Below are positions 9,546-64,000 of a stretch of 64,000 nt of DNA, piece by piece. Under the pieces are notes generated by a model. That model was not told the origin of the DNA, did not search any database, and worked only from the letters and a program-made list of their open reading frames with translations. Source of the stretch: Mytilus californianus (taxonomy: Eukaryota); contig NW_026262690.1 of the NCBI RefSeq assembly GCF_021869535.1, positions 50,158,001 to 50,222,000 of the forward strand, written 5' to 3'. Every line of letters starts with the position of its first letter. Position 1 is the stretch's first letter. Position numbers and translations under genes: made by a program.

Positions 9546-10175
9546 ATGAATAATATGCCATTATTTAATGTTGGAGAGTGGAAATTGTTGAAGATGAACA
9601 TCGATTAAGGGGAACGATATAGACTTTTTAGATCCTCTAGTTTTAATTAATGTTTCAACTGACATACGTATACTACCTAAATTGTTAGCAGATGCTGATT
9701 ACCCTTCCAGAGCACCTGATGACATCCCTTTTTTTTTCTTTTCTTTTTTTTTGCAGAGTTCGTGTTAACAATCCTTAGACTTCTGTGTAGTTTTTTGTGA
9801 TCGGCTGTTTGTCTTTTTGTCGGTTTTTGTTTGATTTGTTTTGGTCATGGTGTTTTCTGTTTTAATAAGACTTGTTGGTTTTGAGGGCCCCTTTCGTTTC
9901 TTTTCAATATCTTTTTAACAGAGGTGAACAGATAATACCCATTGGAATACCAACTGCGAGTAGGAATATAAATCCTTCAAACCCAGCAAATATGTTGTTG
10001 CATTTTAATTATTTCATCATCAAAATATTTGTAATGAAAATAAGAAAAATACAATTATTTGAATGGTTTTAATGGAAAATTTGAAAAATTCCGCGATGCA
10101 GCTTTCTTTGTGTAGTTAAGAAATCATTATATGGAACAAGGATTTTCAAAGAGAAAAAACATCCACCAAATAGAT

Positions 10176-10433
10176 ATAAGAAGATGTGGTATGAGTGCCA
10201 ATGAGACAACTCTCCATCTAAGTCAAAATTTATAAAAGTAAACCATTAAAGGTCAAAGTACGGTCTTCAACACGGAGCCTTGACTCACACCGAACAGCAA
10301 GCTATAAAGGGCCCCAAAAATTACTAGTGTAAAACCATTCAAACGGGAAAACCAACGGTCTAATCTATATAAAAAACGAGAAACGAGAAACACTTTTGAA
10401 CCACATCAACAAACGACAACTACTGAACATCAG
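10176..10433 (+). repeat. Dispersed repeat, AAGAAGATGTGGTATGAGTGCCAATGAGACAACTCTCC family
   Basis: Same head also seen at 18460 (fragment) and, on the minus strand, at 27918..28092, 43879..43990 and 45690..45833. Confidence 0.8.
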
Positions 10434-23718: not shown

Positions 23719-24020
23719 TGTCTCATCAACATCTTTTTATCATAAACGTAAAACTTCCGAAACGAAAAGGACAGTATGATTATTTAATTATAAAGTTTTA
23801 AGACTTAGAAGTGGTGTTACATAATCTATAATACAGATTCTATTTCTATGGGGAATGTTACTTTAAAATGATATTTGATACATAGACACTAAAACAATAA
23901 CATGTTATGTTTTCACCACGGTGACAATTTTTTGCTCGAAATGCAGACAATTAGTCATTGCTTATTTTTTTTCAATTTGGTATTTTTAAGCGAATTATCT
24001 ATTGAAAGTCTGTGCATATA

Positions 24021-24319
24021 AAAATAAGAAGATGTGGTATGATTGCTAATAAGATAACTCTCCATCAGAGACCAAATGACATTGAAGTTAACAACTATAG
24101 GTCACCATACATTTAACAATGAGCAAAACCATTACCGCATAGTAAGCTATAAAAGGCCCAGAAATGACAAATGTAAACAATTCAAACGAGAAAACTAACA
24201 GCCCGATTTATGTACAAAGCAATAAACGAAAAACAAATATGATATACAGCAACAACCACTGAATTACAGGCTATTGACTTGGGACAGGTACATACAGAAT
24301 GTGGCGTTATTAAACATGT
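24021..24319 (+). repeat. Sister dispersed family (AAGAAGATGTGGTATGATTGCCAATGAGACA)
   Basis: Homologs at 30717..30879(-), 39397..39710, 40262..40600, 56208..56520 and 60127..60357. Confidence 0.8.
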
Positions 24320-27917: not shown

Positions 27918-28092
27918 CCGTTTGAATTGTTTTACACTAGTCTTTTTGGGGCATTTTATAGCTTCCTGTTCAGTGTGAGCCAAGCTTCCGTGTTGAATGC
28001 CGTACTTTGACCTATAATTGTTTACTTTTTACACATTGTGACTTGGATGGATAGTTGTCTCATTGGCACTCATACCACATCTTCTTATTTAT
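27918..28092 (-). repeat. Same dispersed family, upstream of A4 and absent from the A3 unit
   Basis: GTTGTCTCATTGGCACTCATACCACATCTTCTTAT end. Confidence 0.8.
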
Positions 28093-28471
28093 ATGTCTAT
28101 TGACATATATATGTATGTTGAAAATTGTAATTCTTTGTATATCATGTACCAAATTGTACTTTAACATAAAAATATCTATCTATCTACACACATCTCCTTA
28201 TTTTCAATTTTGTTGTAAAAAACAGTACTTCATTAATTTATTTGTTTAAATATATTAGAATTGCAAATAATATACTCTTCATGCTTATCCACTTGTTTTG
28301 GTTACTTGGATTATTCCTATTTCATCTCCTTGTAATAATTGTTTAATATATTTTCACTCTCCTTAGTGTATATTCTTGCGACGAATAAAAACTACTCAAG
28401 AATGCTTATTGTTAAATGATAGATCTTTTATTTTTGTCATTATGTAGAATTTTAAATAGGATTCATGTTAT

Positions 28472-28940: not shown

Positions 28941-31813
28941 TCACGTTCGTATCATATTCGTCCTTTTCATTGCTTCTATCAATAAAGTCATACTCTCTAA
29001 TACTCCACTGCCTGTTCTGGCACACATACCATGTATGAACCATTGTCTGTCCTCTATCTGACATAATTCAAGACCTGATGCAAGATCTTTAGGAGTTAAA
29101 GTATCTAACAAAGAAAACAACTTGTGTTTAAACATTGCATATGGGCGCGCATTTAAAACATTCTTATTGTAGATTCAACGAAAAAATCCATAGTTTCATT
29201 TATCAACCAAATAACTGTTTGTTCTAGCTTAAATGATTGCAAGTTTTATAATTTTACAGAAACAAAAATTTGATTTTGTACTTTTTGTCCACAGAAGAAT
29301 GCGACAGAGTATTGAAATGAATTTGGATAGAAAAGATTTTTTAGATAACTCCTCCTGGTTTATTTGACAATAGAACCATGAAAATGGTAACTTTCTTTCA
29401 TAATTATTTAATTTTTTTTGTATTTGAAAGAATAGGGACTTACTAGGTAGATCCTGCTTATTAGCTATAACCCCAAGAGGAATACCTCGTGCTTCTTTGC
29501 AGTTCACTATGTAACGATGGAGGGCTTCTTTAGCTGAATGTAATCTTTTTATATCGCTGCTATCGACAACAAATAAAATGCCTGTAAAATTTTCCGTTTG
29601 AAAATTTATTTAATTTTGACTAATAATAATTACGAATAGACACAATTTTAACAACAAAATTAACAAATAAGGTATATCTCGACTTCTTTAATAATCACTG
29701 TTTTCAGATCTTTCATTAATATAGAATAAACATGTAGGTTTTTTCTTCAAAGGACAAGAAATGAGTTCCACCATTAATAATTAAAATATATGATGTCATA
29801 TAAGTGTGTAAATGTAGATGAAGAATGTTTCATACTAGAATAACATTTGAATATGCAAATATACTTAACAATAAATTGCACGCACCAGTGTATGATCGAA
29901 GATATAGTCGATATTATTGCAGGATAAATTCTTTAAATAAATGATGTGTTTGACTTAATTTCCATGTACTCCAAGCCATAAACTAGTAGGTTCACGAAGG
30001 ATTAAAATTGGCCCTACGATTTTAATGTTTTTGAATCGGGTCAAAATACTACAAATTTCACATAGAAATGTTTATGATATTATTTTTGATACAAAATAAC
30101 TTCTTTTTGGCACAGCACATTACAAATTACGAAGTATTGACCCCTATATTATGCATAATGTATGCTGTAACGTCAGTTTTGGTCCAATTTCACCAATATT
30201 TATCACAGTTTTAGCACAATTAAATTTGGCGATATTTGGGTAAACCTTGTCCTCTGCTACAATTAAAAAAAAATGGAACTCATTTCAAAAACCACTATCA
30301 ATTGTTATATGCTAGTAATAAGGTTCTAACTATTTGCATGTACAGAACATGGCCATAAGTATTCGTCACTTGTCATATAAAACTATGCTTTTTTTTTTAA
30401 ATAATGTGGGGTCATTTCTGGTAAGATTTTAATCAACTTGGTATCAATAGACGCAGAATTTTTACAGAATTATTCAGTCACAGAAACTTGAAAAAAAGAA
30501 AGGTGACGAATACTTTTGGCCATGCACATGTAGGTTGAAGTGTCTTAAAAAAAACGCGTAAAAAAGTAACATCAATTATAGTATGAAGGGTTCATTTTTG
30601 TTCTTCGGATTTCTTTGATTTTTTTAAATATTTCATGAAAAATTATTAACTTATGAAATAAGATTTCATTTTTATATGAGGAAAAATGAAACAGGTGGCG
30701 TTATCTTCTGAATTGTTTCACATTTTGTCATCCCGTGGGCTTACTATAGCTTATTATAGGGAATGGGTTTTGATCATTGTTGAAAACCGTACGGTGACTT
30801 GTAGTTGTTAACATTCTTGTTCTTTATTTTTGGTGGATAGTTGTCTCTTTTTCAATAATACCACATCTCATTTTTATATCAGTCACAAGACTTTGTCGGA
30901 TCATTGAAATTACTTCTCATAAAAAATCTTTTTCAACAATACAATATTTTAAACTCTCACAACAAGATAAAATTCACAGTTCACGAAACCCGATAAATAT
31001 GAGTGCAATAAATCACAGAGACTAAAAGTAGAAGAACGATTGTTCTAGTAAAAACATTATTATTTGTTTAATTTAATATATTTGGCATGTTTAGCAGAAA
31101 TCTGCATCAAACGGTGCATTGAAGTAGATTATTTTGTTTTTTAAATTTTGTATTATAACCACATGCCTCAGTGTATTCAAATGTATAAAATGTTAACTAT
31201 AGGATACTGCTGTTATATGTCAAACCTGACGCATTCAAGAAATAACGCTTCCATTCGTGCCTGATTTTATCCCCGCAACCAACATCCAAGATTGTGAAAT
31301 GTATCCCTCTGAATGTATTAACCGTCTCTATGTTAAACCCAATAGTAGGTAATGTCTCAGAAGTCTTATTTTGAAGCTTATATAATAGCGTAGTTTTCCC
31401 TAAAAATAATAAAAACATCATTGGTAAGATCAGATAATAATAATTAGAAATAGGTTATATAAATCCGATGGCTAAATATCGGAAGATTTTTTTTTGAATC
31501 TATATTATATTTAATGTAAGCTGATGCAAACTTGACAACAAGGTTTGTACTTCGAACAATTATTATGTGTTGTGGATACTTTTGCTTAATGAATGAAGGA
31601 CCATTATATCACTGTGCAAAAAAAATAGTTCTCTTATTTTACTTATTTCCAAATTATTTTTTTGTATCCTAGAGGCGCCAAATAAGTAACATCCAATATA
31701 CATTATTCATAATTACCTGTTGAGGTCAAACCTAGCATTACAATCGTCAATGGCATCGGACCACTCGTTAAATGTTGCCAGAATTTGCTCCATTTTGATA
31801 AGCATATTCCCAT
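28941..31813 (-). CDS. Divergent ARF-like GTPase A5, 190 aa (GLTSTGKT, LDVGCG)
   Basis: join(31717..31813,31226..31399,29444..29581,28941..29104); 573 nt, open frame, GT-AG introns. MGICLS start; NKQD retained. Confidence 0.92.
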
Positions 31814-38700: not shown

Positions 38701-39396
38701 AACATCAACTTACTTTTGCAGCGTTTGTCATTTATTCAGAAATCAGTGTAGCACTTATAGCTACTTAAAACCAAGACTTAAACATTACATATATACAGAC
38801 TTAAACATAACATATGTATATACAAAAAAAAAAACAATAACAAAATGTCAACTTTTTAAAAAGCACATAAAGTGTTACCGTTGGATTTCTACCGTTAAGA
38901 CACACCTTTACTATTCGATTTAGAATAAATACACTTACCTACCGCGTCTAAACCAAGCATCATAACCTTTAACGGTTTTTGACCATTTAACAAATAAAAC
39001 CAAAAACTATTAAACTTCGACACTAATATCCCCATGTTGTTAAGCAGATGACTTCTACATGTAAAACTTTCAACGTGTTTTTATGATGTCGATATTTCCT
39101 TTATAGGTTCGGTTAACCTAAGATCAGTGTATTTACAGTTCGTAAAAATCTATTTTAAATATAATATAGTAGGTAATAATCCTGAAAATATTGAAATTAG
39201 CAGACACAGCCGCATTGTATTCGTTTTTTTTTCTTTCTCTCTGTAAACTATCAATATGATTCGATGGTATAAATATGATCTCTTTCTGATAATTTTACTT
39301 ACAGTTTATTACCGGCATTAACAGTTTTACAATAATAATTCATTACAGGAAGATTTTTGTATTTATGATAGTTATTTATGATAGAAATTAAATATA

Positions 39397-39710
39397 AAAA
39401 TAAGAAGATGTGGCATGATTGCCAATGAGACAATTCTCCATCAGATACCAAATGACCTAGAAGTTAACGCCTTAAACGAGTAGCAAAACCCATACCGCAT
39501 AGTAAGTTATAAAAGGACCTGAAATGACAATTGTAAAACAATTCGAACGAGAAAACTAACGGCCCGATTTATGTACAAAATAATGAACGAAAAACAAATA
39601 TGATATACAGCAAAAACGACATCACTGAATTATAGGATCCTGACTTGGGACAGGCACATAAAGAATGTGGCGGAATTAAACATGTTTGCTGGCGCCAAAC
39701 CCTCCCCCTA
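39397..39710 (+). repeat. Sister dispersed family, near full-length copy
   Basis: Colinear with 24021..24319. Confidence 0.8.
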
Positions 39711-43878: not shown

Positions 43879-43990
43879 CCAAGCTCTGTGTTGAAGGCCG
43901 AACTTTGACCTATAATGATTTAATTTTACAATTTGTGACTTAGATGGAGAGTTGTCTCATTGGCACTCATACCCCATCTTCTTATATCTA
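43879..43990 (-). repeat. Same dispersed family, fragment
   Basis: GAGAGTTGTCTCATTGGCACTCATACC end. Confidence 0.75.
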
Positions 43991-44874
43991 TAGTGTGTAA
44001 AGAACGGTATTATCAATGATAATACACATAAAGAAGACTTTGTAGTGTTATACAGTAATATAATCTTGATTGGTGCATCCTGGCGTAATTCGACATGCTT
44101 GGTTTCAAATTATTTTAGAATAAAAAAGGAAATTATCGTATCATTAAAAACAAGTTTAAGGAAAACATTCTTTAATTATATTGATTAACAGCATATTACA
44201 ACCTTTAGTTTAAAACAGTATAAAATAACACAAATATTGTATCATATAAAATACATATCCTGTTAATAAGACGTTTCTGTCTTACGACTGTACAAACAAT
44301 CCAATAAAAATGTCAGTGTTGATATCTTTTGTGGTCAAAAATTAATCACATTAGATAGTTACGTAGCTGGATACTGATGTGACAAATTTTGTAAACTTTC
44401 TTTGGTAGGGAATTCATGCAATATGAACCAAATTGAAAAGAAAAATAAATTCGTTAAGAATTCATTAAGAATTCATTAAGTATAAAAGACAATGAGGATG
44501 TCTACGTTAAAGTAGCATACGTTAAACTAGCATAGGATATTTTTCTATGTTTTATTTTTAAATATATATTGTTAGAAATAGTATCATAGTAACATGAGTC
44601 ATACATGACATTTAATCAACAATGAATTCTGGTGATATTCTTGTTCACTATGTTGGTCGATGGTGACGGTTCTTAGAACACTGTCTAAGTTTGGGTAATT
44701 TTGTCCCTATCTAAGACCCATATCACACTTATCACATAACTTCTGATCTAGCTTGAACCAACAAGAACAAAATACATAAACTACGTGTTGTGTTTGTACC
44801 TACTAACCATCAGGACAAATTATACCAACTCTGTGTTATGTTTTTATGGTCAATATCAAAAATTTATGATAAAG

Positions 44875-45689: not shown

Positions 45690-45833
45690 GGCCCTTTATA
45701 GCTTGCTGTTCGATGTGAGCCAAGGCTCCGTGTTGAAGGCCGTTCTTTGACCTATAATGGTTTACTTTTACAAATTGTGACTTGGATGGAGAGTTGTCTC
45801 ATTGGCACTCATACCACATCTTCTTATATCTAT
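45690..45833 (-). repeat. Same dispersed family, fragment
   Basis: GGAGAGTTGTCTCATTGGCACTCATACCACATCTTCTTAT end. Confidence 0.8.
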
Positions 45834-46672
45834 TTGCCTAAGGGAGTACATTTTAATTTTAGTAAAATTTCGTAGATAACGAAAAAAAAATCGACACTTC
45901 TATTTTTTAATCATCGTTCTATGTAGCACATCTGTTTTTCTTGAATATCAGACACATCAGAATTTTCTTTTTATTTCTTTTCGTTTTTGAAAATTTTGTT
46001 AAACAAAATTGACAATGGATTGTTCCGATATAAGGTTAATTTTCGCAATCACGTCAGATATGCCTAATTGATTCAGAATTGATATTATTTCATAACTTTA
46101 TAAGTGCTGTTCTGCACAAATGCCGACTACATATGATTTTTTACTTTATGCGCATTTAGCTATGATATTAACAAGAAATATCTGCCCACAAAGGCGACAG
46201 CAGTCGCACTTATCAATGTTCAGATCTTATTGGTCGAAATCTTGTTTAAAACCTAGACATAGTCTTCCAAACAGTCCAAAAATATAGGTTCCTGATGCTT
46301 TCCTATGAAAATTCATACATCACACTTTCTTATCAATTTTACACAAACAAATTTATTTCTGTCATAGTTTAGAAAACACTTAATTGTAATAGGACACAAA
46401 TACATTACATTCCTTTTACTCTACAGAAGAGTCAGCGAGGTATCTATAAATAATAACAATAGGTTCGAACAACATCGACGAGCCATATTCTTCTATTTAA
46501 TTAGTACGTTATCTTCAATAGAAAATAGTAGTGGCTCTATTAATTGTATTCTCATACACCAAAAATGTAATGTCATGTAAGTTGCTTCCAGCGAAGAATT
46601 AGTCGTCAGTATCCAATGATCTTTGACCTTGTTCTATCATACTGTATCTAGTAATATATCGCACATACTATA

Positions 46673-54865: not shown

Positions 54866-56842
54866 TTATTTCCTGATGGCTTCTGCCATAGCTCTCATGC
54901 TGTCATTTAGTCCATTTCCTGTTGTGCCACTTGCACCGTTGATAAACCAACGTCTGTCTCTCACTTCATGCAAATTCAAAACGTTTGCAATTTCTGACGG
55001 ACTAATGGCATCTGCAAAATTCAAATTAAATTTGGACATGCTACTTTTTTCAATATTCAAATATATTTTATTCTTGAGTAATCGTTTAATGCATTTTTTT
55101 TGTAAAAACACAGATTAATCATATTCAAAATGCAAATTCGTCCTTTTTAAAAAGAAATTTAATTCGTTTATTAAATTTCAAGAACGTTTGAGACGTTAAT
55201 GCATGTATGTAAAATGTTTTACAAAGACTCTACACATAAAAAACAATGAAATTTTTGTAAACTCGTAAAAAATAAAAATAAGTAATAAAATTATATGCAA
55301 GTCATGTGTTATCGAAATGGTATTTAATATAAGACAAACTACTTCATAAATATAAGATACGAACTAGGAAGGTCCTGTTTATTGGCTATAACAACCAGTG
55401 GTACTTCTTTCAATATGTCAAAGTTAAGTATACGATGTAATATATCTTTCGCTTCATTCAGTCTGTCTCCATCATTGCTATCCACAACGTACATGATGCC
55501 TGCAAAATTACAGAATAGTAAAAACGACATGGAAGTAATTTGTTTATTGATATGTTCAACTTCTCAAAACGTAAGCACAACAAAGATTAAAGAGACTTTC
55601 AGAAATCGACCCTTTCAGTCAAGGTAAATCTGTTTATCCTCAACAGTTTGGTACATGTAACCTTTCTAGTAATATATGATTATTTAACCGTTCATATTAT
55701 TTAAGCGCAAAAAAGTTAAATTATCCAGAGTTTATCATAAAAGTGTGGCACAACATTCATACAAGACTTGTAGTTACTCTGTATACACTATAAAATGTAG
55801 CGTAAGAGTCACTCAATTGAGACAGAATATAAAAACTTTAGGCATACCTGCTGTGTTATTAAAGTAATGTACCCACAAAGGAATCATGTCTTCTAGAAAA
55901 GGAATGTCCCATACCGTGAAATTGATCCCTTCAACTGGAGTAATGGTTTCGATATTAAATCCAATCGTTGGTATTGTCTGAACGTTTATGTTGTATTTCA
56001 TCTTATATAAGATTGTCGTTTTTCCTACAAGCAATTACAAAAATGTTAATGTATTGTCTCATGTAATATAAAATACCTTCCGGTAGGAGGAATGTTGATG
56101 GGATCGACATTTTTCTGTGAACCAAAAGAATGTCTTTAAGGCAGTGGTCACTGGATGAAAAAAATGTTGAAGAGGCCCAACTCCTCTAATGATTGATTTA
56201 AATTTATAAAACAAGAAGATGTGGTATGGCGCCTAATGAAGCAACTGTCAACTCGATACCAGATGACGTAGACGTAAGCAACTACTATAATCTTCAACAA
56301 TTAACAAAACCTATACCGTATGGTAAGCTATACACGTCCAAAATTGACAAAATTTAAAACAAGAAAACCATCGGCTTGATTTACATATTAAACATTAAAC
56401 GAAAAACAAATATGAGAGACAGCAAGTAACAACCACTGAATTATAATGACTTGGGCAAGGGACCTACATAATGTGGCGGGTTTAAACAAGTTTACTAGCG
56501 ATCATTCCTCTTCTAACCAAAACTTTGCCACTTGACGTTAAACAAACCAACAATCAATCAATCTAACCTAGAATTACAAATTATAAAAACAAATTAAAAA
56601 AAAAGAAGATTAAGACCTTTCGGATCGATTTAAGCATATTTTAAACATCCCCGAGTTCTGTTCCAACGCTTAGAATACGACTGTCGTCGAATTGTACACA
56701 TGATACATGTAATACCTTTCAATATACTAATTCATAAAACAAGAGAACCGGCATTTGACCTCCCTCCACCGTCTAATCCAAGCATTACTATTTTGTATGT
56801 AGCTGGTTCTCCTAACAAAGATTTAGATATCAATGATCCCAT
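54866..56842 (-). CDS. Divergent ARF-like A8 (WDIPFL); exon-1 donor non-canonical, possible pseudogene
   Basis: Exon 1 ~56764..56842 (MGSLISKS..GLDGG), exon 2 55848..56024, exon 3 55365..55499, exon 4 54866..55011; no internal stops. The expected exon-1 donor reads G|GGAGGT instead of G|GT. Confidence 0.72.
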
Positions 56843-57267: not shown

Positions 57268-57754
57268 ATTATATGATGTGCATTTACCTTTATATGATGT
57301 GCACTTGTCATTATATGATGTGCAAACACCTTTATATGATGTGCAAATATCCTTATATTATGTGCAAGTATCCTTACATGATGTCAAAACATCCTTATAT
57401 GATGTGCTAATATACTTATATGATGTGCATATATACTTATATGATGTGCAAATATACTTATATTATGGTCAAATGTACTTATATGATGTGCAAATGTACT
57501 TATATGATGTGCAAACATTCTTATATGATGTGCAAATATTCTTATATGATGTGCAAATATCCTTATATGATGTCATATATAATTACATGATGTGAAAATG
57601 TACTTATATGATGTGCAAAGATCCTAATATGATGTGCAATTATACTTATATGATGTGCAAATATACTTATATGATTTTCAAATATTCTTATATAATGTGC
57701 AAATGTACTTATATTATGGACAATCAGCTTTATATGATGTGGTTGTAACCTTAC
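57268..57754 (+). repeat. 21-bp minisatellite (TATATGATGTGCAAATATACT-like)
   Basis: More than 20 degenerate units; a further unit continues after the transposon at 61314. Confidence 0.92.
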
Positions 57755-60700
57755 CACTGTGTCTAAACTACCCCGGCAAAAAAATGTTTGGACTCGAATA
57801 TCTAATATCCGGCACGGTGACGGAACATCAATAGACAGAGAAAAGGTAGTTTTCTGTTTATTTATTTGTTATTTTTATGATACCGAAGAATATATATATA
57901 TACATATATAACTATTTTCTATTGTGAGATGTAATATTTTCTACAACCATTCTATTAACGGAGAAATAAGTAAAAAAACACGTCAAAATGACGAATTGAG
58001 TGAATCTTGCCTCGAATTTGTTTAATATCTCGTTAAATTGTTCACATTGTACTGAAAGAAAGGTACGGAAAGAAAAATATTGGCATAACAAGCCACTTTG
58101 AGCACCTCAATACTTGTATTTCTGTGTATGGAACGAAAGAAATGGATCATGTCAAAATGGAAGGAGCCGATTTTGTCAATGTGTACAACCCGGTTTTGTC
58201 CTATATTTCACAAGGCAGAACCCGGTTTTGTCAAAGAAAAAAATGCATAATCGCATAACATAATTGAACTTTTGCGTTTTAAAGGAGTCTGGTGGCTCGT
58301 TGGAAAACGATTTCTTTCAGAGGACAACTTATTATTTATTTGAATCTGTAAACACTTGAATTCCTTCTTTATTGGAACAAAAATAATTATAATTTTGCTT
58401 TGCATTTAAACATGATAACCCTACTCACATACATCCAATTTCGCGGGTGTCCCTGTTTTTTTTTATTTCTTATAAAATTCCAAGTTGGTATACGATTTAG
58501 TTATATAAAATTAGTGACGAATCCAGGCAGCGTATAGGTCGCACGTCCCCACCCCACCTTTGATGGCCCCAAAAAAATTAAATAATGTTTTTTACGATTT
58601 TTTTTTAGCTTAAAATCGCCCAAAAAATACTTTAACTGCGAAATAGAAATGAAGGTTATAACGCAAATTGAGATTTAAGTCCTCTGTACCTTTTTTTCTA
58701 TGAAATATGTAAATTTAAGTGATCAAACTTGAAATTAAAGTTTACGGTCTTAAAAATTGAAACACGCACATTTGATATGTGATTTTCTTGCACAACAGGA
58801 TGGTTATCTTTATAAGTAATCCAATCTACCAAGAGGTGTTATCTTGAATGTCCCTCTGGCATCTTTCGCCCCTCTTTCCTATAATCGTTTAAAATAAATC
58901 TTCTTCAGGCTAAGTGTCTATTATAAGACATGATAAGAAGACAAATGTATAGGTGTAATACCACCAAATGATAGTACATCCGGTTGCCTACGAAAATAGG
59001 TCGAAAAAAATATTCCCTTGAATTTGACAGTTGTAGGTAATTAATTCTACATTTCATTGCAGTAAAACATTTCTGGGTCATAAACATATATCTTGGGTAT
59101 TTCAAAGCACCATTATTTTTTATTTTGGGTTTCCATAGAATATTTTAGAAACTTGAGGTTACATGGTTACTAATTAAAAGCTTGTACACAGATAAAAAAG
59201 AGGTGAAAATTTGATTGGTTAACTTCCAGTGATGGTTATTTTCTTATATGCAATGAAATGTTATGTGAAATTTTTTCTATAGTACTGAACAGGATAAAAC
59301 TTTACTCATGCCAAGTATTTCTTTATTTGAAACAAAGACAAATTCTGCACATTTTTTTGAAAAGTGCAAATTTGACAAAGACTAATAGGAGAAAATCAAT
59401 GGTGGTAGTACACCTATATGCATGCAGAATCGCCATAGAAAATGAATGTTTATGGGGAGAAAAGGATAATACTAAGTGTAAATTTGTGCAATTGTCTCAG
59501 GCCATCAAGAAAATGCAATAATGATTATTTAATTCATAGTTCTATAAACAAACAGTTCTGTTATCTCTTCATTGTGTTATGATTATCGTACATTGGCGTT
59601 GGTCAATATATCATTAACAATATATAGGGATGGATTTAGGTTTTTTCAAAGTGGGCGTATTTCAAACAACTTACATACCGCCGAGCGTAGCGAGGCGAAC
59701 AATTTTTTGGACGATTTTAAGCTAAAAAAAAATCGTAAAAAACATGATTTAATTTTTTTGGGGCCATCAAAGTTGGGGTTTGGGGCGTGCGACCTATACG
59801 CTGCTTGGATGTATGTGAGTAGGGTTATCATGTTTATTCTAAAAATTCACATTGATATTTTAAAATTGTCGAAATGCGAGACCAAAGGATGCAAATTCGT
59901 GGCGGCTTGAACTATTTGTATGGAGCTTCATATGTCAGAAGTTAGAAGGCCTGACTACCTCGCACACAGATCTTTTATCTTACGATGTTTCTATCTGTCA
60001 TATGTCCATTGCCCTGGCTTTGACCTCATTTTAGTTCAGCGATTTCCTAACAAAATGAATAGCTGTGAATATCACACTGATAATGGTTGATATACATGAT
60101 CAAGGTTAACATTTCGTGTTCAATATAAAAAAGTAGATATGGTATGATTGCCAATGAGACAACTCTCCACACCAGACCAAATGACACAGAAATTAACAGC
60201 TACATGTCACCGTACGGCCTTCAACAATGAGCAAAGCCCATACTGCATAGTCAGCTATAAAAGGCCCCGAAATCACAAATGTAAAACAATTCAAACGAGA
60301 AAACTAACAGCCTAATTAATGTACAAAAAATGAACGAAAAACAAATATGTAACACAAATCCGTATCTCTAATACCATAAGTAAAAGGTCAACTATATTTG
60401 CTCATATGGCCACATGACTATTTATGAGACCTTGAACTTATTTTCTTGATTAATTGGTAAATGTTAAGTTTTTATTTTTTTTGTTGGTTTTAATGATTGT
60501 AATGTGTTCATGTCCGTCTGGCAGGTTTCATTAGACCTTGACTTTTTTATGGTTCCATGAATAATGTTAAGTTTATGTGATACTTTTATTAAATTATTTA
60601 TCTTACAGATCTTCAAAATAGGTTCAATTACGATCATTCAAGCAGTCGCTACATGTCAGTGCGTACGCTCTTGTATAAATAATATGTAGTATTTATTTTT

Positions 60701-61313
60701 GTTGAAAAAACGCATGTGAAGTTGTTTTAGAATAACATATATATTGAAATTTTTTCGATGGACAATGTTTAGATCCGTGTTAACGTGCTTTCCATACATT
60801 TGTGGTTTCAAAACAAAACAAAACCGGGTCATATACATAGACAAAACCGGGTGATTTTGTAGTAAACAACATTGACAAAACCGGCTCCTTCCCTTTTGAC
60901 ATGACCCATTTCTTTCGTTCCATACACAGAAATACAAGTATTGAGGTGATCAAAGTGGCTAGTTTTGCAATCTCCATGTCAATATCTTTCTTACCGTACC
61001 TTTCTTTCCGTACAATGTGAACAATTTAACGAGATATTAAACAAATTCGAGGCAAGGTTCACTCAATTCGTCATTTTGACGTGCATTTTTACATATTTCT
61101 CCGTTAATCTAGAATGGTTGTAGAAAATATTAAATCTCACAATAGAAAATAGTTTTATATATTTATATATATATATATTCTTCGATATCATAAAAATAAC
61201 AAATAAATAAACAGAAAACTACCTTTTCTCTGTCTATTGATGTTCCGTCACCGTGCAGGATATTAGATACCATCGAGTCCAAACATTTTTGCCGGGGTAG
61301 TTTAGACACAGTG
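57755..61313. mobile_element. Non-autonomous DNA transposon with Transib/RAG-like ends (CAC termini, 5-bp TSD CTTAC, ~480-bp TIRs)
   Basis: The arms 57755..58231 and 60818..61313 are inverted repeats; the first 28 nt are identical (CACTGTGTCTAAACTACCCCGGCAAAAA). CTTAC directly flanks both ends (57750-54 and 61314-18). No transposase ORF recognised. Confidence 0.85.
60127..60357 (+). repeat. Sister dispersed family, nested inside the Transib-like element
   Basis: GGTATGATTGCCAATGAGACAACTCTCCAC head. Confidence 0.8.
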
Positions 61314-61607
61314 CTTACATGATGTGGTTGGGTTTACTTCGTTATATGATGTCGAAACGTCATTATGTGCTTTCATCGTCGTTATGGTCAATGAACATGA
61401 TTACGATTAGAACGATTACTGTCTATGTCATAACTGATTCCGATCTGCTTCTGTGGAATTACTATAAACCTGGCGCAAATCTGTAGCTATCGTTTGGAAA
61501 ATGGTTGAGATTTAAAAAGAGATAAACCTTGGCTTGTTGGTACCTCGTTTTAAGATAAAAAAGATCAAATCTGATATTGTTGGAAAATTGTCAAAATATG
61601 AATTGCA

Positions 61608-61942
61608 AAAGAGGGACGAAAGATACCAGAGGGACAGTCAAACTCATAGATCGAAAACAAACTGACAACGCCATGGCCAAAAATAAAAAGAAAAACAGAC
61701 AAATAATAGCACAGATGACACAACATAGAAAACTAAAGACGTAGCAACACGAACCCCACCAAAAACTGGGGGTGATCTCAGGTGCTCCGGAAGGGTAAGC
61801 AGATCCTGCTCCACATGTGGCACCCGTCGTGTTGCTTATGTTATTACAAATCCGGTAAATAGTCTAATTCGGTATGTCACATTCGTGAAAAGGGAAGGGT
61901 ATTGTAGTTACGACATAAGGAACATATCCGATATCATCTGCA
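61608..61942 (+). repeat. Dispersed repeat (GAAAGATACCAGAGGGACAGTCAAACTC...CTCCGGAAGGGTAAGCAG family)
   Basis: Related minus-strand fragments at about 8130-8280, 9690-9865, 53705-53915 and 58848-58880. Confidence 0.65.
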
Positions 61943-62756: not shown

Positions 62757-63912
62757 ATGGGTGGAAGGTCCTCGAAAGTTGATGAATTATTTTCACACTT
62801 TCCACAGTTAGATAAAACTCATATAATAGTGATTGGATTACACAATGCGGGTAAGAATAATTTAAGGAAATAGTATCATATTGGACAGATTAATTTAAAG
62901 CAATAATATCATATTGAACAGATTAATTTAAAGCAATAGTATCATATTGGACAGATTAATTTTAAGCAATAGTATCATATTGGACAAATTAATTTAAAGC
63001 AATAGTATCATATTGGACAGATTAATTTAAAGCAATAGTATCATATTGGACAGATTAATTTAAAGCAATAGTATCATATTGGACAGATTAATTTAAAGCA
63101 ATAGTATCTTAATAGATAGACATGGTTTCAACTTCTTTACGCATGACACATGTTACCGGAATAGTCCTCATCGGATATGGTCTGTAAACCAGACCTAAAA
63201 TCTAAAAAGGTGTAATGATTAATCGTTAAATAGATTCTATATTTTTCGACAGGTAAAACATCCATTATGCGAGGCATGGGTTTAGATTCCGGCTTGAAGA
63301 AGATTTCCCAGGTAGGAATGCCAATTCTGACAGCAAAGATTGGTAAAAATGTCCACATCACAGCATGGGATGTTGGTGGACCTGGCAAATTACGGAGTAT
63401 GTGGGAGCATTATTTCAGTGTATCTAAAGGTAAATTTATAATTTTTCAAACCTTTTGCCTTAATTAGCAAATATAATTACAGTAGTTTCATAATCAATCT
63501 ATGGAAGACCTACACAAAATGTGCGATGGCATCAAGATTGAAAGAAAATAAATATTATCATTTCTTTATAAATACCATTTAAAATTAAAAAAAAAGGCAG
63601 GTTTGTTGCAGTTATTCGATATCTGTGTTTATTTGAAAAAAAGAAAGAACTCCATTAGACTTATGAATTTGAATATCCCTTTGGTAACTTTCGCCTCTCA
63701 TTTTCCTTTGCTTATTTCATTTGAAATGACTAAATCTGCAATCATGTATTAATTTTGAATCATATAAATACATTCAGGTATAGTGTTTGTAGTTGATAGT
63801 ACTAACAAGGAAACACTAGCAGAAGCTTCTGTGGAACTTAATACCATTTTAAATAAAAAGATATTGGCTGGTGTTCCTTTAATGGTAATGGCAAACAAGC
63901 AAGATATGCTCG
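62757..63912 (+). CDS. Divergent ARF-like A9, 3'-partial (exon 4 outside window), opposite orientation
   Basis: join(62757..62850,63253..63429,63778..63912); GT-AG introns, phase 1. MGGRSS..GLHNAGKT, switch I KISQVGMP, WDVGGP, NKQD. Confidence 0.9.
62859..63108 (+). repeat. 33-bp minisatellite, ~7.6 copies, in intron 1 of A9
   Basis: TTGGACAGATTAATTTAAAGCAATAGTATCATA starts at 62881, 62914, 62947, 62980, 63013, 63046 and 63079. Confidence 0.95.
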
Positions 63913-64000
63913 GTAAGATATTTAAATATAACAAAATATATTCAAATAAGAGTCAAAAGTTGCGTTTGTTCATATAATATATACACACGTCTATATTAGA

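What the first reader, a model, noticed from the sequence alone, without database searches (positions are those of the whole stretch)
57755..61313. 3.56-kb element with RSS-like ends and a 5-bp TSD: Transib/RAG-transposon signature between divergent ARF genes
Seen: both ends read inward CACTGTG-TCTAAACTACCCCG-GCAAAAA; CTTAC is duplicated on both flanks. Removing the element and one CTTAC restores the exact 21-nt period of the host minisatellite (GATGTGG to GATGTGG), which independently supports the TSD. TIRs run ~480-500 bp and end in CCCGGTTTTGT subrepeats. Established: CAC termini with 5-bp TSDs characterise Transib and RAG-like (ProtoRAG) transposons; CACTA and Chapaev make 2-4-bp TSDs; the RSS heptamer is CACAGTG and the nonamer ACAAAAACC; RAG-like transposons have been reported in bivalves. 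Caveats: heptamer 6/7, nonamer-like 6/9, spacer 14 rather than 12/23, and TIRs much longer than usual. Inference: a non-autonomous family mobilised by a Transib or RAG1L transposase.
Basis: partly seen in the sequence, partly recalled or inferred. Interest (0 to 1): 0.75.

Follow-up and report, generated by a model that had tools for sequence, protein, structure and literature searches.

The report
Long-TIR mussel transposon, 5-bp duplication
This is a genuine, gene-less cut-and-paste jumping element in a mussel genome whose ends (CAC...GTG) and 5-letter target duplication point to the transposon group related to the antibody-gene recombinase RAG1, but the enzyme that moves it was not found, so that link stays an inference.

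Summary
A 3,559-bp element (57755-61313) has perfect 28-nt inverted termini that begin with CACTGTG. Its arms are 478 and 496 nt long and 95.5% identical. Each arm carries three CCCGGTTTTGT-type subterminal motifs. CTTAC abuts both ends. Only a 5-bp duplication fits, and removing the element plus one CTTAC best restores the host 21-nt minisatellite register.

The element has no ORF over 112 aa and no Pfam or Rfam match. Its arms are multi-copy in contigs of four public runs from three organism labels, so this is a non-autonomous member of a repeated family.

The Transib/RAG-like attribution is only partly supported. CAC ends plus a 5-bp duplication are that group's published hallmark, and HzTransib also has long TIRs. 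However, the "nonamer" resemblance is at chance level (24% of CAC sites in the window show it), the protostome RAGL end consensus is not met, and the CACTG ends with subterminal repeats also recall CACTA-type elements. I could retrieve no other copy and no autonomous partner.

First readers of this scan noted at least nine similar elements (CAC...GTG ends, 5-bp duplication) elsewhere in the same genome. All of those notes are unchecked.

Verdict: new member of a known kind, of moderate interest.

The parts
57269..57749 (.). Host 21-nt minisatellite (target of the insertion). Degenerate units continue to the right of the element to about 61373.
   Evidence: TRF, (period 21, 22.6 copies, 81% matches, 0% indels); repeat family D2.
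57750..57754 (.). Left copy of the 5-bp target site duplication CTTAC.
   Evidence: chance 0.2%.
57755..57782 (+). Left terminus: 28 nt perfectly inverted with the right terminus, starting CACTGTG. It is followed by an A-run of 7.
   Evidence: I7; 0 expected by chance.
57755..58232 (+). Left terminal inverted repeat arm, 478 nt. It contains an (AT)n stretch at about 57884-57917.
   Evidence: 95.5% identity to the right arm over aligned pairs, 13 gap events.
58164..58232 (+). Left subterminal motif cluster: GCCGATTTTGTC (degenerate copy), then AACCCGGTTTTGTC at 58187-58200 and at 58219-58232.
   Evidence: D10, D17; read.
58233..60817 (.). Internal region without coding capacity. It is partly made of other repeats (58407-59836 and 60123-60349).
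   Evidence: longest ORF 112 aa; no Pfam match; no Rfam match.
58407..59836 (.). Inner inverted-repeat unit: 32-nt perfect ends, arms about 135 nt, and a 100-nt extra block in the left arm. It is either a nested element or an internal palindrome of the family.
   Evidence: (I4, I6).
60123..60349 (+). Copy of a roughly 230-bp dispersed repeat sitting inside the element. There are 8 more copies in the window, and it is hyper-abundant in read contigs.
   Evidence: loose ends at 60123 and 60328.
60818..60889 (-). Right subterminal motif cluster: ACAAAACCGGGT at 60818 and at 60841, and ACAAAACCGGCT at 60875.
   Evidence: D3, D15.
60818..61313 (-). Right terminal inverted repeat arm, 496 nt.
61286..61313 (-). 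Right terminus, the reverse complement of the left 28 nt. The A-run here is 5.
61314..61318 (.). Right copy of the 5-bp target site duplication CTTAC.

Best explanation
This is one copy of a multi-copy, non-autonomous cut-and-paste DNA transposon family of Mytilus mussels. It inserted into a 21-nt minisatellite between two head-to-head Arf-like genes.

Shown:
- Perfect CACTGTG...CACAGTG termini.
- Arms of about 480-500 nt at 95.5% identity.
- Three CCCGGTTTTGT-type subterminal motifs per arm.
- A 5-bp target duplication.
- No coding capacity.
- Arm sequences repeated in read contigs labelled as three different organisms.

Inferred:
- A DDE transposase supplied in trans by an autonomous relative binds the terminal ~25-30 nt, and probably also the subterminal CCGG + T/A-run motifs.
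- It cuts at the CAC ends and reinserts the element with cuts staggered by 5 bp.
- Because CAC ends with a 5-bp duplication are the hallmark of the Transib/RAG-like branch of the CMC-Transib supergroup, the most likely mobiliser is a Transib-type or RAG1L-type transposase rather than a classical CACTA, Chapaev or Mirage one.
For: Termini and arms:
- The 28-nt inverted termini are perfect, with 0 matches expected by chance.
- The arms are 478 and 496 nt long at 95.5% identity.

Target duplication:
- The CTTAC duplication fits only as 5 bp. Its chance is 0.2%, and the minisatellite register is best restored at k=5.

No coding capacity:
- No ORF exceeds 112 aa, and there are no Pfam or Rfam matches.

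Multi-copy family:
- Summed contig depth over the arms is 10^3.5 to 10^4.7, against 5-50 for single laid contigs, in all 4 runs from 3 organism labels.
- Between 12 and 29 contigs per run carry A-run length variants at 57778 and 61285, so the terminal region itself is multi-copy.

Literature:
- Transib was defined as the only superfamily with 5-bp TSDs and has invariant CAC ends (PMC1131882).
- Protostome RAGL transposons have CAC ends and invariably 5-bp TSDs, and non-autonomous derivatives occur in a pearl oyster (PMC7204232).
- HzTransib (3,518 bp) has long TIRs and a 5-bp TSD (PMC1852546).
- CMC elements make 2-4-bp TSDs (bioRxiv 10.64898/2026.08.26.747230).

Unchecked leads:
- Nine first-reader notes describe CAC...GTG elements with 5-bp TSDs elsewhere in this genome.
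Against: - No transposase is linked to these ends. No other copy or autonomous partner could be fetched.
- The TSD length is verified for this one copy only.
- The ends do not fit the published end models. Against the Transib heptamer CACAATG the match is 5/7.
- The A-rich 'nonamer' sits at spacer 14-16 rather than 12 or 23, differs by 2 nt between the arms, and is at chance level (24% of CAC sites).
- The RAGL consensus is matched at 7/17 positions, with its AAA block shifted by 3 nt.
- CACTG ends plus clustered subterminal repeats are classical CACTA traits (my own knowledge).
- A survey of mollusc genomes found a single Transib DDE ORF, whereas CMC was present in all of them (PMC10294476).
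- TSD length and end sequence are reported to vary within the Transib lineage, so they support but cannot decide a classification (bioRxiv 10.64898/2026.08.26.747230).
Confidence: 0.55

Rival explanations
1. A non-autonomous member of a CMC-type (CACTA/Mirage/Chapaev-like) lineage whose transposase makes a 5-bp rather than a 2-4-bp staggered cut. It would be mobilised by one of the large CMC-type elements of mussels.
For: - The ends start CACTG, and each arm carries clustered subterminal repeats within long TIRs. This is the classical CACTA architecture (my own knowledge).
- CMC is present in all surveyed mollusc genomes, whereas only one Transib ORF was found (PMC10294476).
- Unchecked scan notes report CMC-type transposases with a RAG1-like fold in this same genome (s1-279518, s1-279504).
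- TSD length is labile in this clade (bioRxiv 10.64898/2026.08.26.747230).
Against: - Published CMC TSDs are 2-4 bp, and here only 5 bp fits.
- The CMC-type element noted in this genome is said to have CGCG ends and a TA duplication, not CAC ends and 5 bp (unchecked).
Confidence: 0.27
2. A member of an undescribed or other DDE superfamily that happens to combine CAC ends with a 5-bp duplication. One candidate is the Sola2-like element with CAC...GTG ends noted elsewhere in this genome.
For: - No transposase link exists.
- An unchecked scan note (s1-287965) reports a Sola2-like transposase with CAC...GTG termini in the same genome.
- End motifs recur across superfamilies.
Against: No known superfamily other than Transib/RAGL pairs CAC ends with 5-bp TSDs (PMC1131882). 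Sola elements make 4-bp TSDs (my own knowledge).
Confidence: 0.12
3. A gene-less derivative of a Maverick/Polinton element that keeps only the long TIRs.
For: Mavericks have TIRs of hundreds of nucleotides and are common in molluscs (PMC8969392, PMC10294476). The arms here are about 480-500 nt.
Against: - Mavericks make 6-bp TSDs (PMC8969392), and here only 5 bp fits.
- The ends are CAC...GTG, not the AG...CT-type ends described for Polintons (my own knowledge).
- There is no remnant of Maverick genes.
- A gene-less derivative would need protein-primed replication in trans.
Confidence: 0.04
4. Not a mobile element: a local inverted duplication or an assembly artefact inside a minisatellite.
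For: The site is repetitive, and a minisatellite can mimic short flanking repeats.
Against: - The arms are multi-copy in four independent runs from three organism labels.
- The boundaries are exact, with a 5-mer duplication whose removal restores the 21-nt register.
- The window contains no N.
Confidence: 0.02

Closest known systems
Transib superfamily, especially HzTransib and non-autonomous Transib derivatives (TransibN families; hopper/Kodama of Drosophila)
   Same: - 5'-CAC...GTG-3' ends and a 5-bp target duplication.
- Cut-and-paste elements with gene-less derivatives that outnumber autonomous copies.
- HzTransib is 3.5 kb and is described as having long TIRs (PMC1131882, PMC1852546, bioRxiv 10.64898/2026.08.26.747230).
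   Different: - The heptamer is CACTGTG rather than CACAATG or CACGGTG.
- There is no heptamer-12/23-nonamer layout above chance.
- Each arm carries three subterminal CCCGGTTTTGT motifs.
- The insertion lies in an AT-rich minisatellite (the 35-bp site is 43% GC), whereas Transibs prefer GC-rich sites.
- No Transib transposase has been tied to these ends, and Transib ORFs are nearly absent from surveyed molluscs (PMC10294476).
Protostome RAGL (RAG1L-RAG2L) transposons and their non-autonomous TIR pairs (Crassostrea virginica, Pinctada imbricata, Notospermus; PMC7204232)
   Same: - Bivalve hosts.
- Ends beginning CACT.
- Invariably 5-bp TSDs.
- Non-autonomous TIR pairs exist.
   Different: - The published consensus CACTWMCAAACKTYKBB is matched at only 7/17 positions.
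- The conserved AAA (TR2) lies at 11-13 here, not 8-10.
- RAGL similarity between ends is described as largely confined to about 13-15 bp, whereas here about 480 nt are inverted.
- RAGL non-autonomous elements were reported as few, whereas this family is abundant.
- No RAG1L has been reported for Mytilus in the searched literature.
CACTA (En/Spm-type) non-autonomous elements of the CMC superfamily
   Same: - CACTG/CACTA-type termini.
- Long subterminal regions with repeated short motifs in both arms, which serve as accessory transposase-binding sites in En/Spm (my own knowledge).
- CMC is the sister group of Transib.
   Different: CMC TSDs are 2-4 bp, and here the TSD is 5 bp.

Membership tests
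Non-autonomous TIR (class II) transposon, generic | Terminal inverted repeats, flanking target site duplication, no transposase gene, multiple copies | tested here: met
   TIRs; TSD; no coding capacity; multi-copy arms in 4 runs.
Transib superfamily | 5-bp target site duplication | tested here: met
   CTTAC lies on both sides and only N=5 fits. This is one copy only; other copies rest on unchecked scan notes.
Transib superfamily | Invariant 5'-CAC at both ends | tested here: met
   Both ends read inward CACTGTG.
Transib superfamily | 38-bp RSS-like end: CACAATG heptamer, roughly 23 (or 12)-bp spacer, AAAAAAATC nonamer (PMC1131882) | tested here: not met
   The heptamer matches 5/7. The best A-rich 9-mer lies at spacer 16 in the left arm (8/9) but scores only 6/9 in the right arm. 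The RSS nonamer scores 6/9 at spacer 14. Matches of this kind occur at 24% of CAC sites in the window.
Transib superfamily | Autonomous copies encode a Transib/RAG1-core DDE transposase | not testable with these tools
   No access to the rest of this genome. Every route to other copies came back blank.
Transib superfamily | [quoted passage not shown] | tested here: inconclusive
   The 35-bp site is 43% GC against 32% for the window, but this is a single insertion, and it lies in an AT-rich minisatellite.
RAGL transposons (protostome RAGL-B type) | 5-bp TSD and a CAC heptamer | tested here: met
RAGL transposons (protostome RAGL-B type) | End consensus CACTWMCAAACKTYKBB with a conserved AAA at positions 8-10 (TR2) | tested here: not met
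   Read: 7/17 positions match without gaps. AAA lies at 11-13, so a fit needs a 3-nt insertion.
RAGL transposons (protostome RAGL-B type) | Convergent RAG1L-RAG2L gene pair in autonomous copies | not testable with these tools
   No autonomous copy is reachable. No paper pairs RAG1L with Mytilus.
CMC (CACTA/Mirage/Chapaev) | 2-4-bp target site duplication | tested here: not met
   N=2, 3 and 4 do not give identical flanks; only N=5 does.
CMC (CACTA/Mirage/Chapaev) | CACTA/CACTG-type ends with subterminal repeat clusters | tested here: met
   CACTG ends and three CCCGGTTTTGT-type motifs per arm.
Maverick/Polinton | 6-bp TSD with TIRs of hundreds of nucleotides | tested here: not met
   The TIR length fits (478 and 496 nt), but the TSD is 5 bp, not 6 (PMC8969392).
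Ginger2/TDD | TGTNR termini (4-bp TSD in animals, 5 bp only in Dictyostelium TDD-4 and TDD-5) | tested here: not met
   The ends are CACTG (PMC2836005).
KolobokP | Long terminal direct repeats and a TTAA duplication | tested here: not met
   The repeats are inverted and the TSD is CTTAC (PMC9587614).

The most novel reading that the evidence does not exclude
Mytilus mussels carry an abundant family (hundreds to thousands of ends) of long-TIR elements that are moved by a RAG1-like or Transib-type transposase. Alternatively, the mobiliser is a lineage intermediate between CACTA-type and Transib-type transposons, combining CACTA-like subterminal repeat architecture with the 5-bp cut of RAG/Transib. 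Either case would give protostomes their first high-copy natural substrate set for a RAG-like transposase. It would also imply much more RAG-like or Transib activity in bivalves than ORF-based surveys have detected.
Probability: 0.22. Interest if true: 0.7.

Novelty: new member of a known kind. Interest (0 to 1): 0.42.

Why it matters
RAG-like and Transib transposons are the evolutionary source of the V(D)J recombinase. In protostomes they are known from a few, mostly decayed, copies, and an ORF-based survey found a single Transib in all molluscs examined.

If this abundant mussel family is moved by such an enzyme, three things follow:
- It marks strong past or present activity of that enzyme in bivalves.
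- It supplies many natural ends and target sites for studying end recognition by a RAG-like transposase.
- It offers a simple handle, the terminus, for finding the autonomous element in the assembly.

If the mobiliser turns out to be CMC-type, the family shows instead that the 5-bp duplication is not diagnostic of Transib. That matters for how transposons are classified.

Locally, the insertion sits in the roughly 7-kb region between the nearest identified exons of two head-to-head Arf-like genes. I did not test any effect on those genes.

Tried and rejected
Routes to other copies, all blank:
- A word search of the 5.8-billion-protein set with the 50-aa ORF that the terminus happens to encode found no candidate.
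- Exact scans of JGI metagenome contigs with a 20-nt terminus and a 23-nt inner arm word gave 0 hits. A scan of GTDB genome contigs also gave 0 hits.
- Exact look-ups of flanking Arf exon ORFs, arm ORFs, internal ORFs and the ORF that starts right after the TSD were all absent from the collection. I could therefore fetch no allelic or orthologous locus to look for an empty site.
- blastn of the element against the window found no other copy of the arms.

- I laid the whole 4.5-kb stretch at 85% likeness.
- Hyper-abundant internal repeats swamped the tables, so loose ends at the termini (flanks of other copies) and any clean empty-site joint were not shown.
- The one joint across the element (X20, 57384 to 61365) comes from a high-depth minisatellite contig that also folds back on itself. 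I do not count it as an empty site.
- In hindsight, laying only the two ends would have been better.

Readings I rejected:
- RSS-like nonamer and spacer: at chance level.
- RAGL TR2 consensus: 7/17 positions.
- Ginger2, KolobokP, Maverick, hAT, Mutator and P: wrong ends and/or wrong TSD length.
- A decayed autonomous Transib of typical 3-4-kb size: no ORF piece gives any Pfam hit.

Searches I did not run:
- Further costly protein searches with other arm ORFs, because the look-ups above indicate that short mussel ORFs are not in those collections.
- I could not read Yuan & Wessler 2011, which is not held.
Full report
**What is there**

Reading the sequence and the repeat finder confirm an element at 57755-61313 (3,559 bp).
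- Its first and last 28 nt are perfect reverse complements (CACTGTGTCTAAACTACCCCGGCAAAAA). This word occurs only at these two places in the window, and 100 dinucleotide-preserving shuffles gave no match.
- A global alignment of the arms runs for 478 nt on the left (57755-58232) and 496 nt on the right (60818-61313). It has 445 matches, 21 mismatches and 13 gap events, which is 95.5% identity over aligned pairs and 87.6% over all columns.
- The first 23 nt are identical. Then the A-run is 7 nt in the left arm and 5 nt in the right arm.
- At the inner end of each arm lie three copies of a short motif. On the left these are AACCCGGTTTTGTC twice and a degenerate GCCGATTTTGTC. On the right they are ACAAAACCGGGT twice and ACAAAACCGGCT.

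**The target duplication**

- CTTAC abuts both ends (57750-57754 and 61314-61318). With the ends fixed by the inverted repeat, flank lengths of 2, 3, 4 or 6 do not match. Only 5 does.
- Identical 5-mers at this spacing occur at 0.2% of window positions.
- The host is a 21-nt minisatellite (57269-57741, 22.6 units, no indels) whose degenerate units continue on the right of the element (family D2).
- When the element and k further bases are removed, agreement at lag 21 across the junction is best for k=5 (12/21). The next best values are 10/21, at k=8 and k=11. The two GATGTGG words then lie exactly 21 nt apart.

**No coding capacity**

The longest ORF overlapping the element is 112 aa. Sixteen ORF pieces from the arms and interior gave no Pfam match better than E = 0.04, and Rfam found nothing.

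Much of the interior is other repeats:
- An inner inverted-repeat unit lies at 58407-59836 (32-nt perfect ends, arms about 135 nt).
- A copy of a roughly 230-bp dispersed repeat lies at 60123-60349, with eight more copies in the window.

**A family, not a one-off**

The single read-laying run (Logan contigs of four runs, three organism labels, likeness of at least 85%) shows summed contig depth of roughly 3,700-46,000 over the arm bins in every run. Individual laid contigs have depths of about 5-50.
- Between 12 and 29 contigs per run carry a 1-nt shorter A-run at 57778 or a 1-nt longer one at 61285. The terminal region itself is therefore present in many distinct copies, and the A-run length varies among them.
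- The tool warns that depth is not copy number. I read it only as "hundreds to thousands of ends".
- The table of loose ends was swamped by hyper-abundant internal repeats, so I could not read the flanks of other copies.
- One joint across the element (X20) comes from a high-depth minisatellite contig and is not a usable empty site.

**Attempts to reach other copies or the autonomous partner**

All of these failed:
- Protein word search with an ORF borne by the terminus.
- Metagenome and prokaryote-genome scans with the terminus and an arm word.
- Exact look-ups of twelve ORFs from the flanks and the element.
- The window itself, which holds no second copy.

They remain undone.

**Classification from anatomy and literature**

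Points in favour of Transib/RAG-like:
- Transib was defined as the only eukaryotic DNA transposon superfamily with 5-bp TSDs, and CAC is invariant at its ends (PMC1131882).
- Protostome RAGL transposons (oysters, a ribbon worm) have CAC ends and invariably 5-bp TSDs, and a few gene-less TIR pairs were seen in a pearl oyster (PMC7204232).
- CMC elements make 2-4-bp TSDs (bioRxiv 10.64898/2026.08.26.747230). Mavericks make 6-bp TSDs (PMC8969392). Animal Ginger2 elements make 4-bp TSDs and have TGTNR ends (PMC2836005). KolobokP has direct terminal repeats and TTAA (PMC9587614).
- Long TIRs are not foreign to Transib, because the active HzTransib (3,518 bp) "has long TIRs" and a 5-bp TSD (PMC1852546).

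Points against, or neutral:
- The finer "RSS-like" layout does not survive testing. A match of at least 6/9 to the RSS nonamer at a spacer of 10-25 follows 289 of 1,210 CAC sites in this window (24%).
- The best match to the Transib nonamer (8/9) is at spacer 16 in one arm only.
- The A-run differs between the arms and among copies.
- The protostome RAGL consensus CACTWMCAAACKTYKBB is matched at 7/17 positions, with the conserved AAA displaced by 3 nt.
- CACTG ends and clustered subterminal motifs are classical CACTA traits (my own knowledge).
- CMC is found in all surveyed mollusc genomes, while a single Transib ORF was found (PMC10294476).
- A recent preprint shows TSD length (5, 3 or 2 bp) and end sequence varying within one Transib lineage. 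It argues that these traits support but cannot override transposase phylogeny (bioRxiv 10.64898/2026.08.26.747230).

**Earlier notes of this scan (unchecked, used as leads only)**

- First readers described at least nine other elements in this same genome with CAC...GTG or CACTGTG ends and a 5-bp TSD. Several have long TIRs, and their sizes range from 1.3 to 5.6 kb.
- Follow-up agents reported RAG1/Transib-like and CMC-type transposases with a RAG1-like fold elsewhere in the genome.
- None of these could be compared with the present ends.
- The notes make it likely that the 5-bp duplication is a family trait and that candidate mobilisers exist. I did not verify either point.

**Mechanism, committed**

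This is a non-autonomous cut-and-paste element. A DDE transposase of the Transib/RAG1L branch, supplied in trans, recognises the terminal ~25-30 nt (a CAC heptamer followed by a conserved stretch). It probably also uses the CCGG + T/A-run motifs about 410-480 nt inside each end as accessory sites. It excises the element at the CAC ends and integrates it with a 5-bp stagger.
- The anatomy is shown.
- The identity of the enzyme and the role of the subterminal motifs are inferred.

I put 0.55 on the Transib/RAGL branch, 0.27 on a CMC-type lineage with an atypical 5-bp stagger, 0.12 on another or undescribed superfamily, 0.04 on a Maverick derivative and 0.02 on a non-mobile origin.

**Context**

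- The flanking exons are Arf-family. They lie on the - strand to the left (55339-56034) and on the + strand to the right (63267-63977), so the element lies between two head-to-head paralogues of a larger Arf-like cluster.
That closed the route to annotated orthologous loci.

**Verdict**

This is a new member of a known kind, of moderate interest, and its main value is as a handle for finding an active RAG-like, Transib or CMC mobiliser in mussels.

Noticed in passing
window 6000-56034 (- strand) and 63267-63977 (+ strand): The window holds a cluster of Arf-like GTPase paralogues. P-loop, WDVGG and NKQD exon motifs recur at about 6.0-6.5, 12.8-13.7, 18.3-19.3, 26.2-26.9, 29.5-31.4, 37.0, 49.1 and 55.4-56.0 kb on the - strand, and at 63.3-63.9 kb on the + strand. 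Some copies have altered motifs, for example DIPFLE in place of DVGGQ at about 55.9 kb and WDVGGP at 63.4 kb.
   Followed up: partly
window 58407-59836: An inner inverted-repeat unit sits inside the element. It has 32-nt perfect ends (TAAACATGATAACC...) and arms of about 135 nt at about 96% identity. A 100-nt extra block lies in the left arm only. No clear TSD is present (the flanks are ..GCATT and TTCTA..). It is unclear whether this is a nested foldback element or part of the family's body.
   Followed up: partly
window 60123-60349 (also 24016-24241, 39388-39602, 10169-10405, 27919-28094, 30701-30879, 56205-56414, 45690-45834, 43883-43991): A roughly 230-bp dispersed repeat has nine copies in the window at 67-84% identity. 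It is hyper-abundant in all four read sets (summed depth 10^6 to 10^7), with sharp loose-end boundaries at 60123 and at 60328-60356. It looks SINE-like and I did not classify it.
   Followed up: partly
window 58960-59413 and 61528-61800: Two further hyper-abundant repeats show summed contig depth of 10^5 to 10^6.9 in all runs. One lies inside the inner inverted-repeat unit and the other in the right flank of the element.
   Followed up: no
window 57384 / 61365 (run X20): One high-depth contig joins minisatellite units on the left of the element to minisatellite-like sequence on its right, skipping 3,980 bp, and it also folds back within the array. This could reflect array copies elsewhere or an element-free allele. 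It is too confounded to use.
   Followed up: no
window 62854-63000: A 33-nt tandem repeat (4.5 copies, 91% matches) lies just upstream of the + strand Arf-like exons.
   Followed up: no
window 57776-57784, 58187-58232 and 60818-60889: The terminal word CCCCGG+CAAAAA and the subterminal word CCCGG+TTTTGT share a CCGG core. The adjoining A/T-run lies in opposite orientation in the two words. The subterminal word read on the other strand (ACAAAACCG) is 7/9 to the RSS nonamer, but it is about 410-480 nt from the end and in the wrong orientation. I take this as coincidence or as a shared binding half-site.
   Followed up: no
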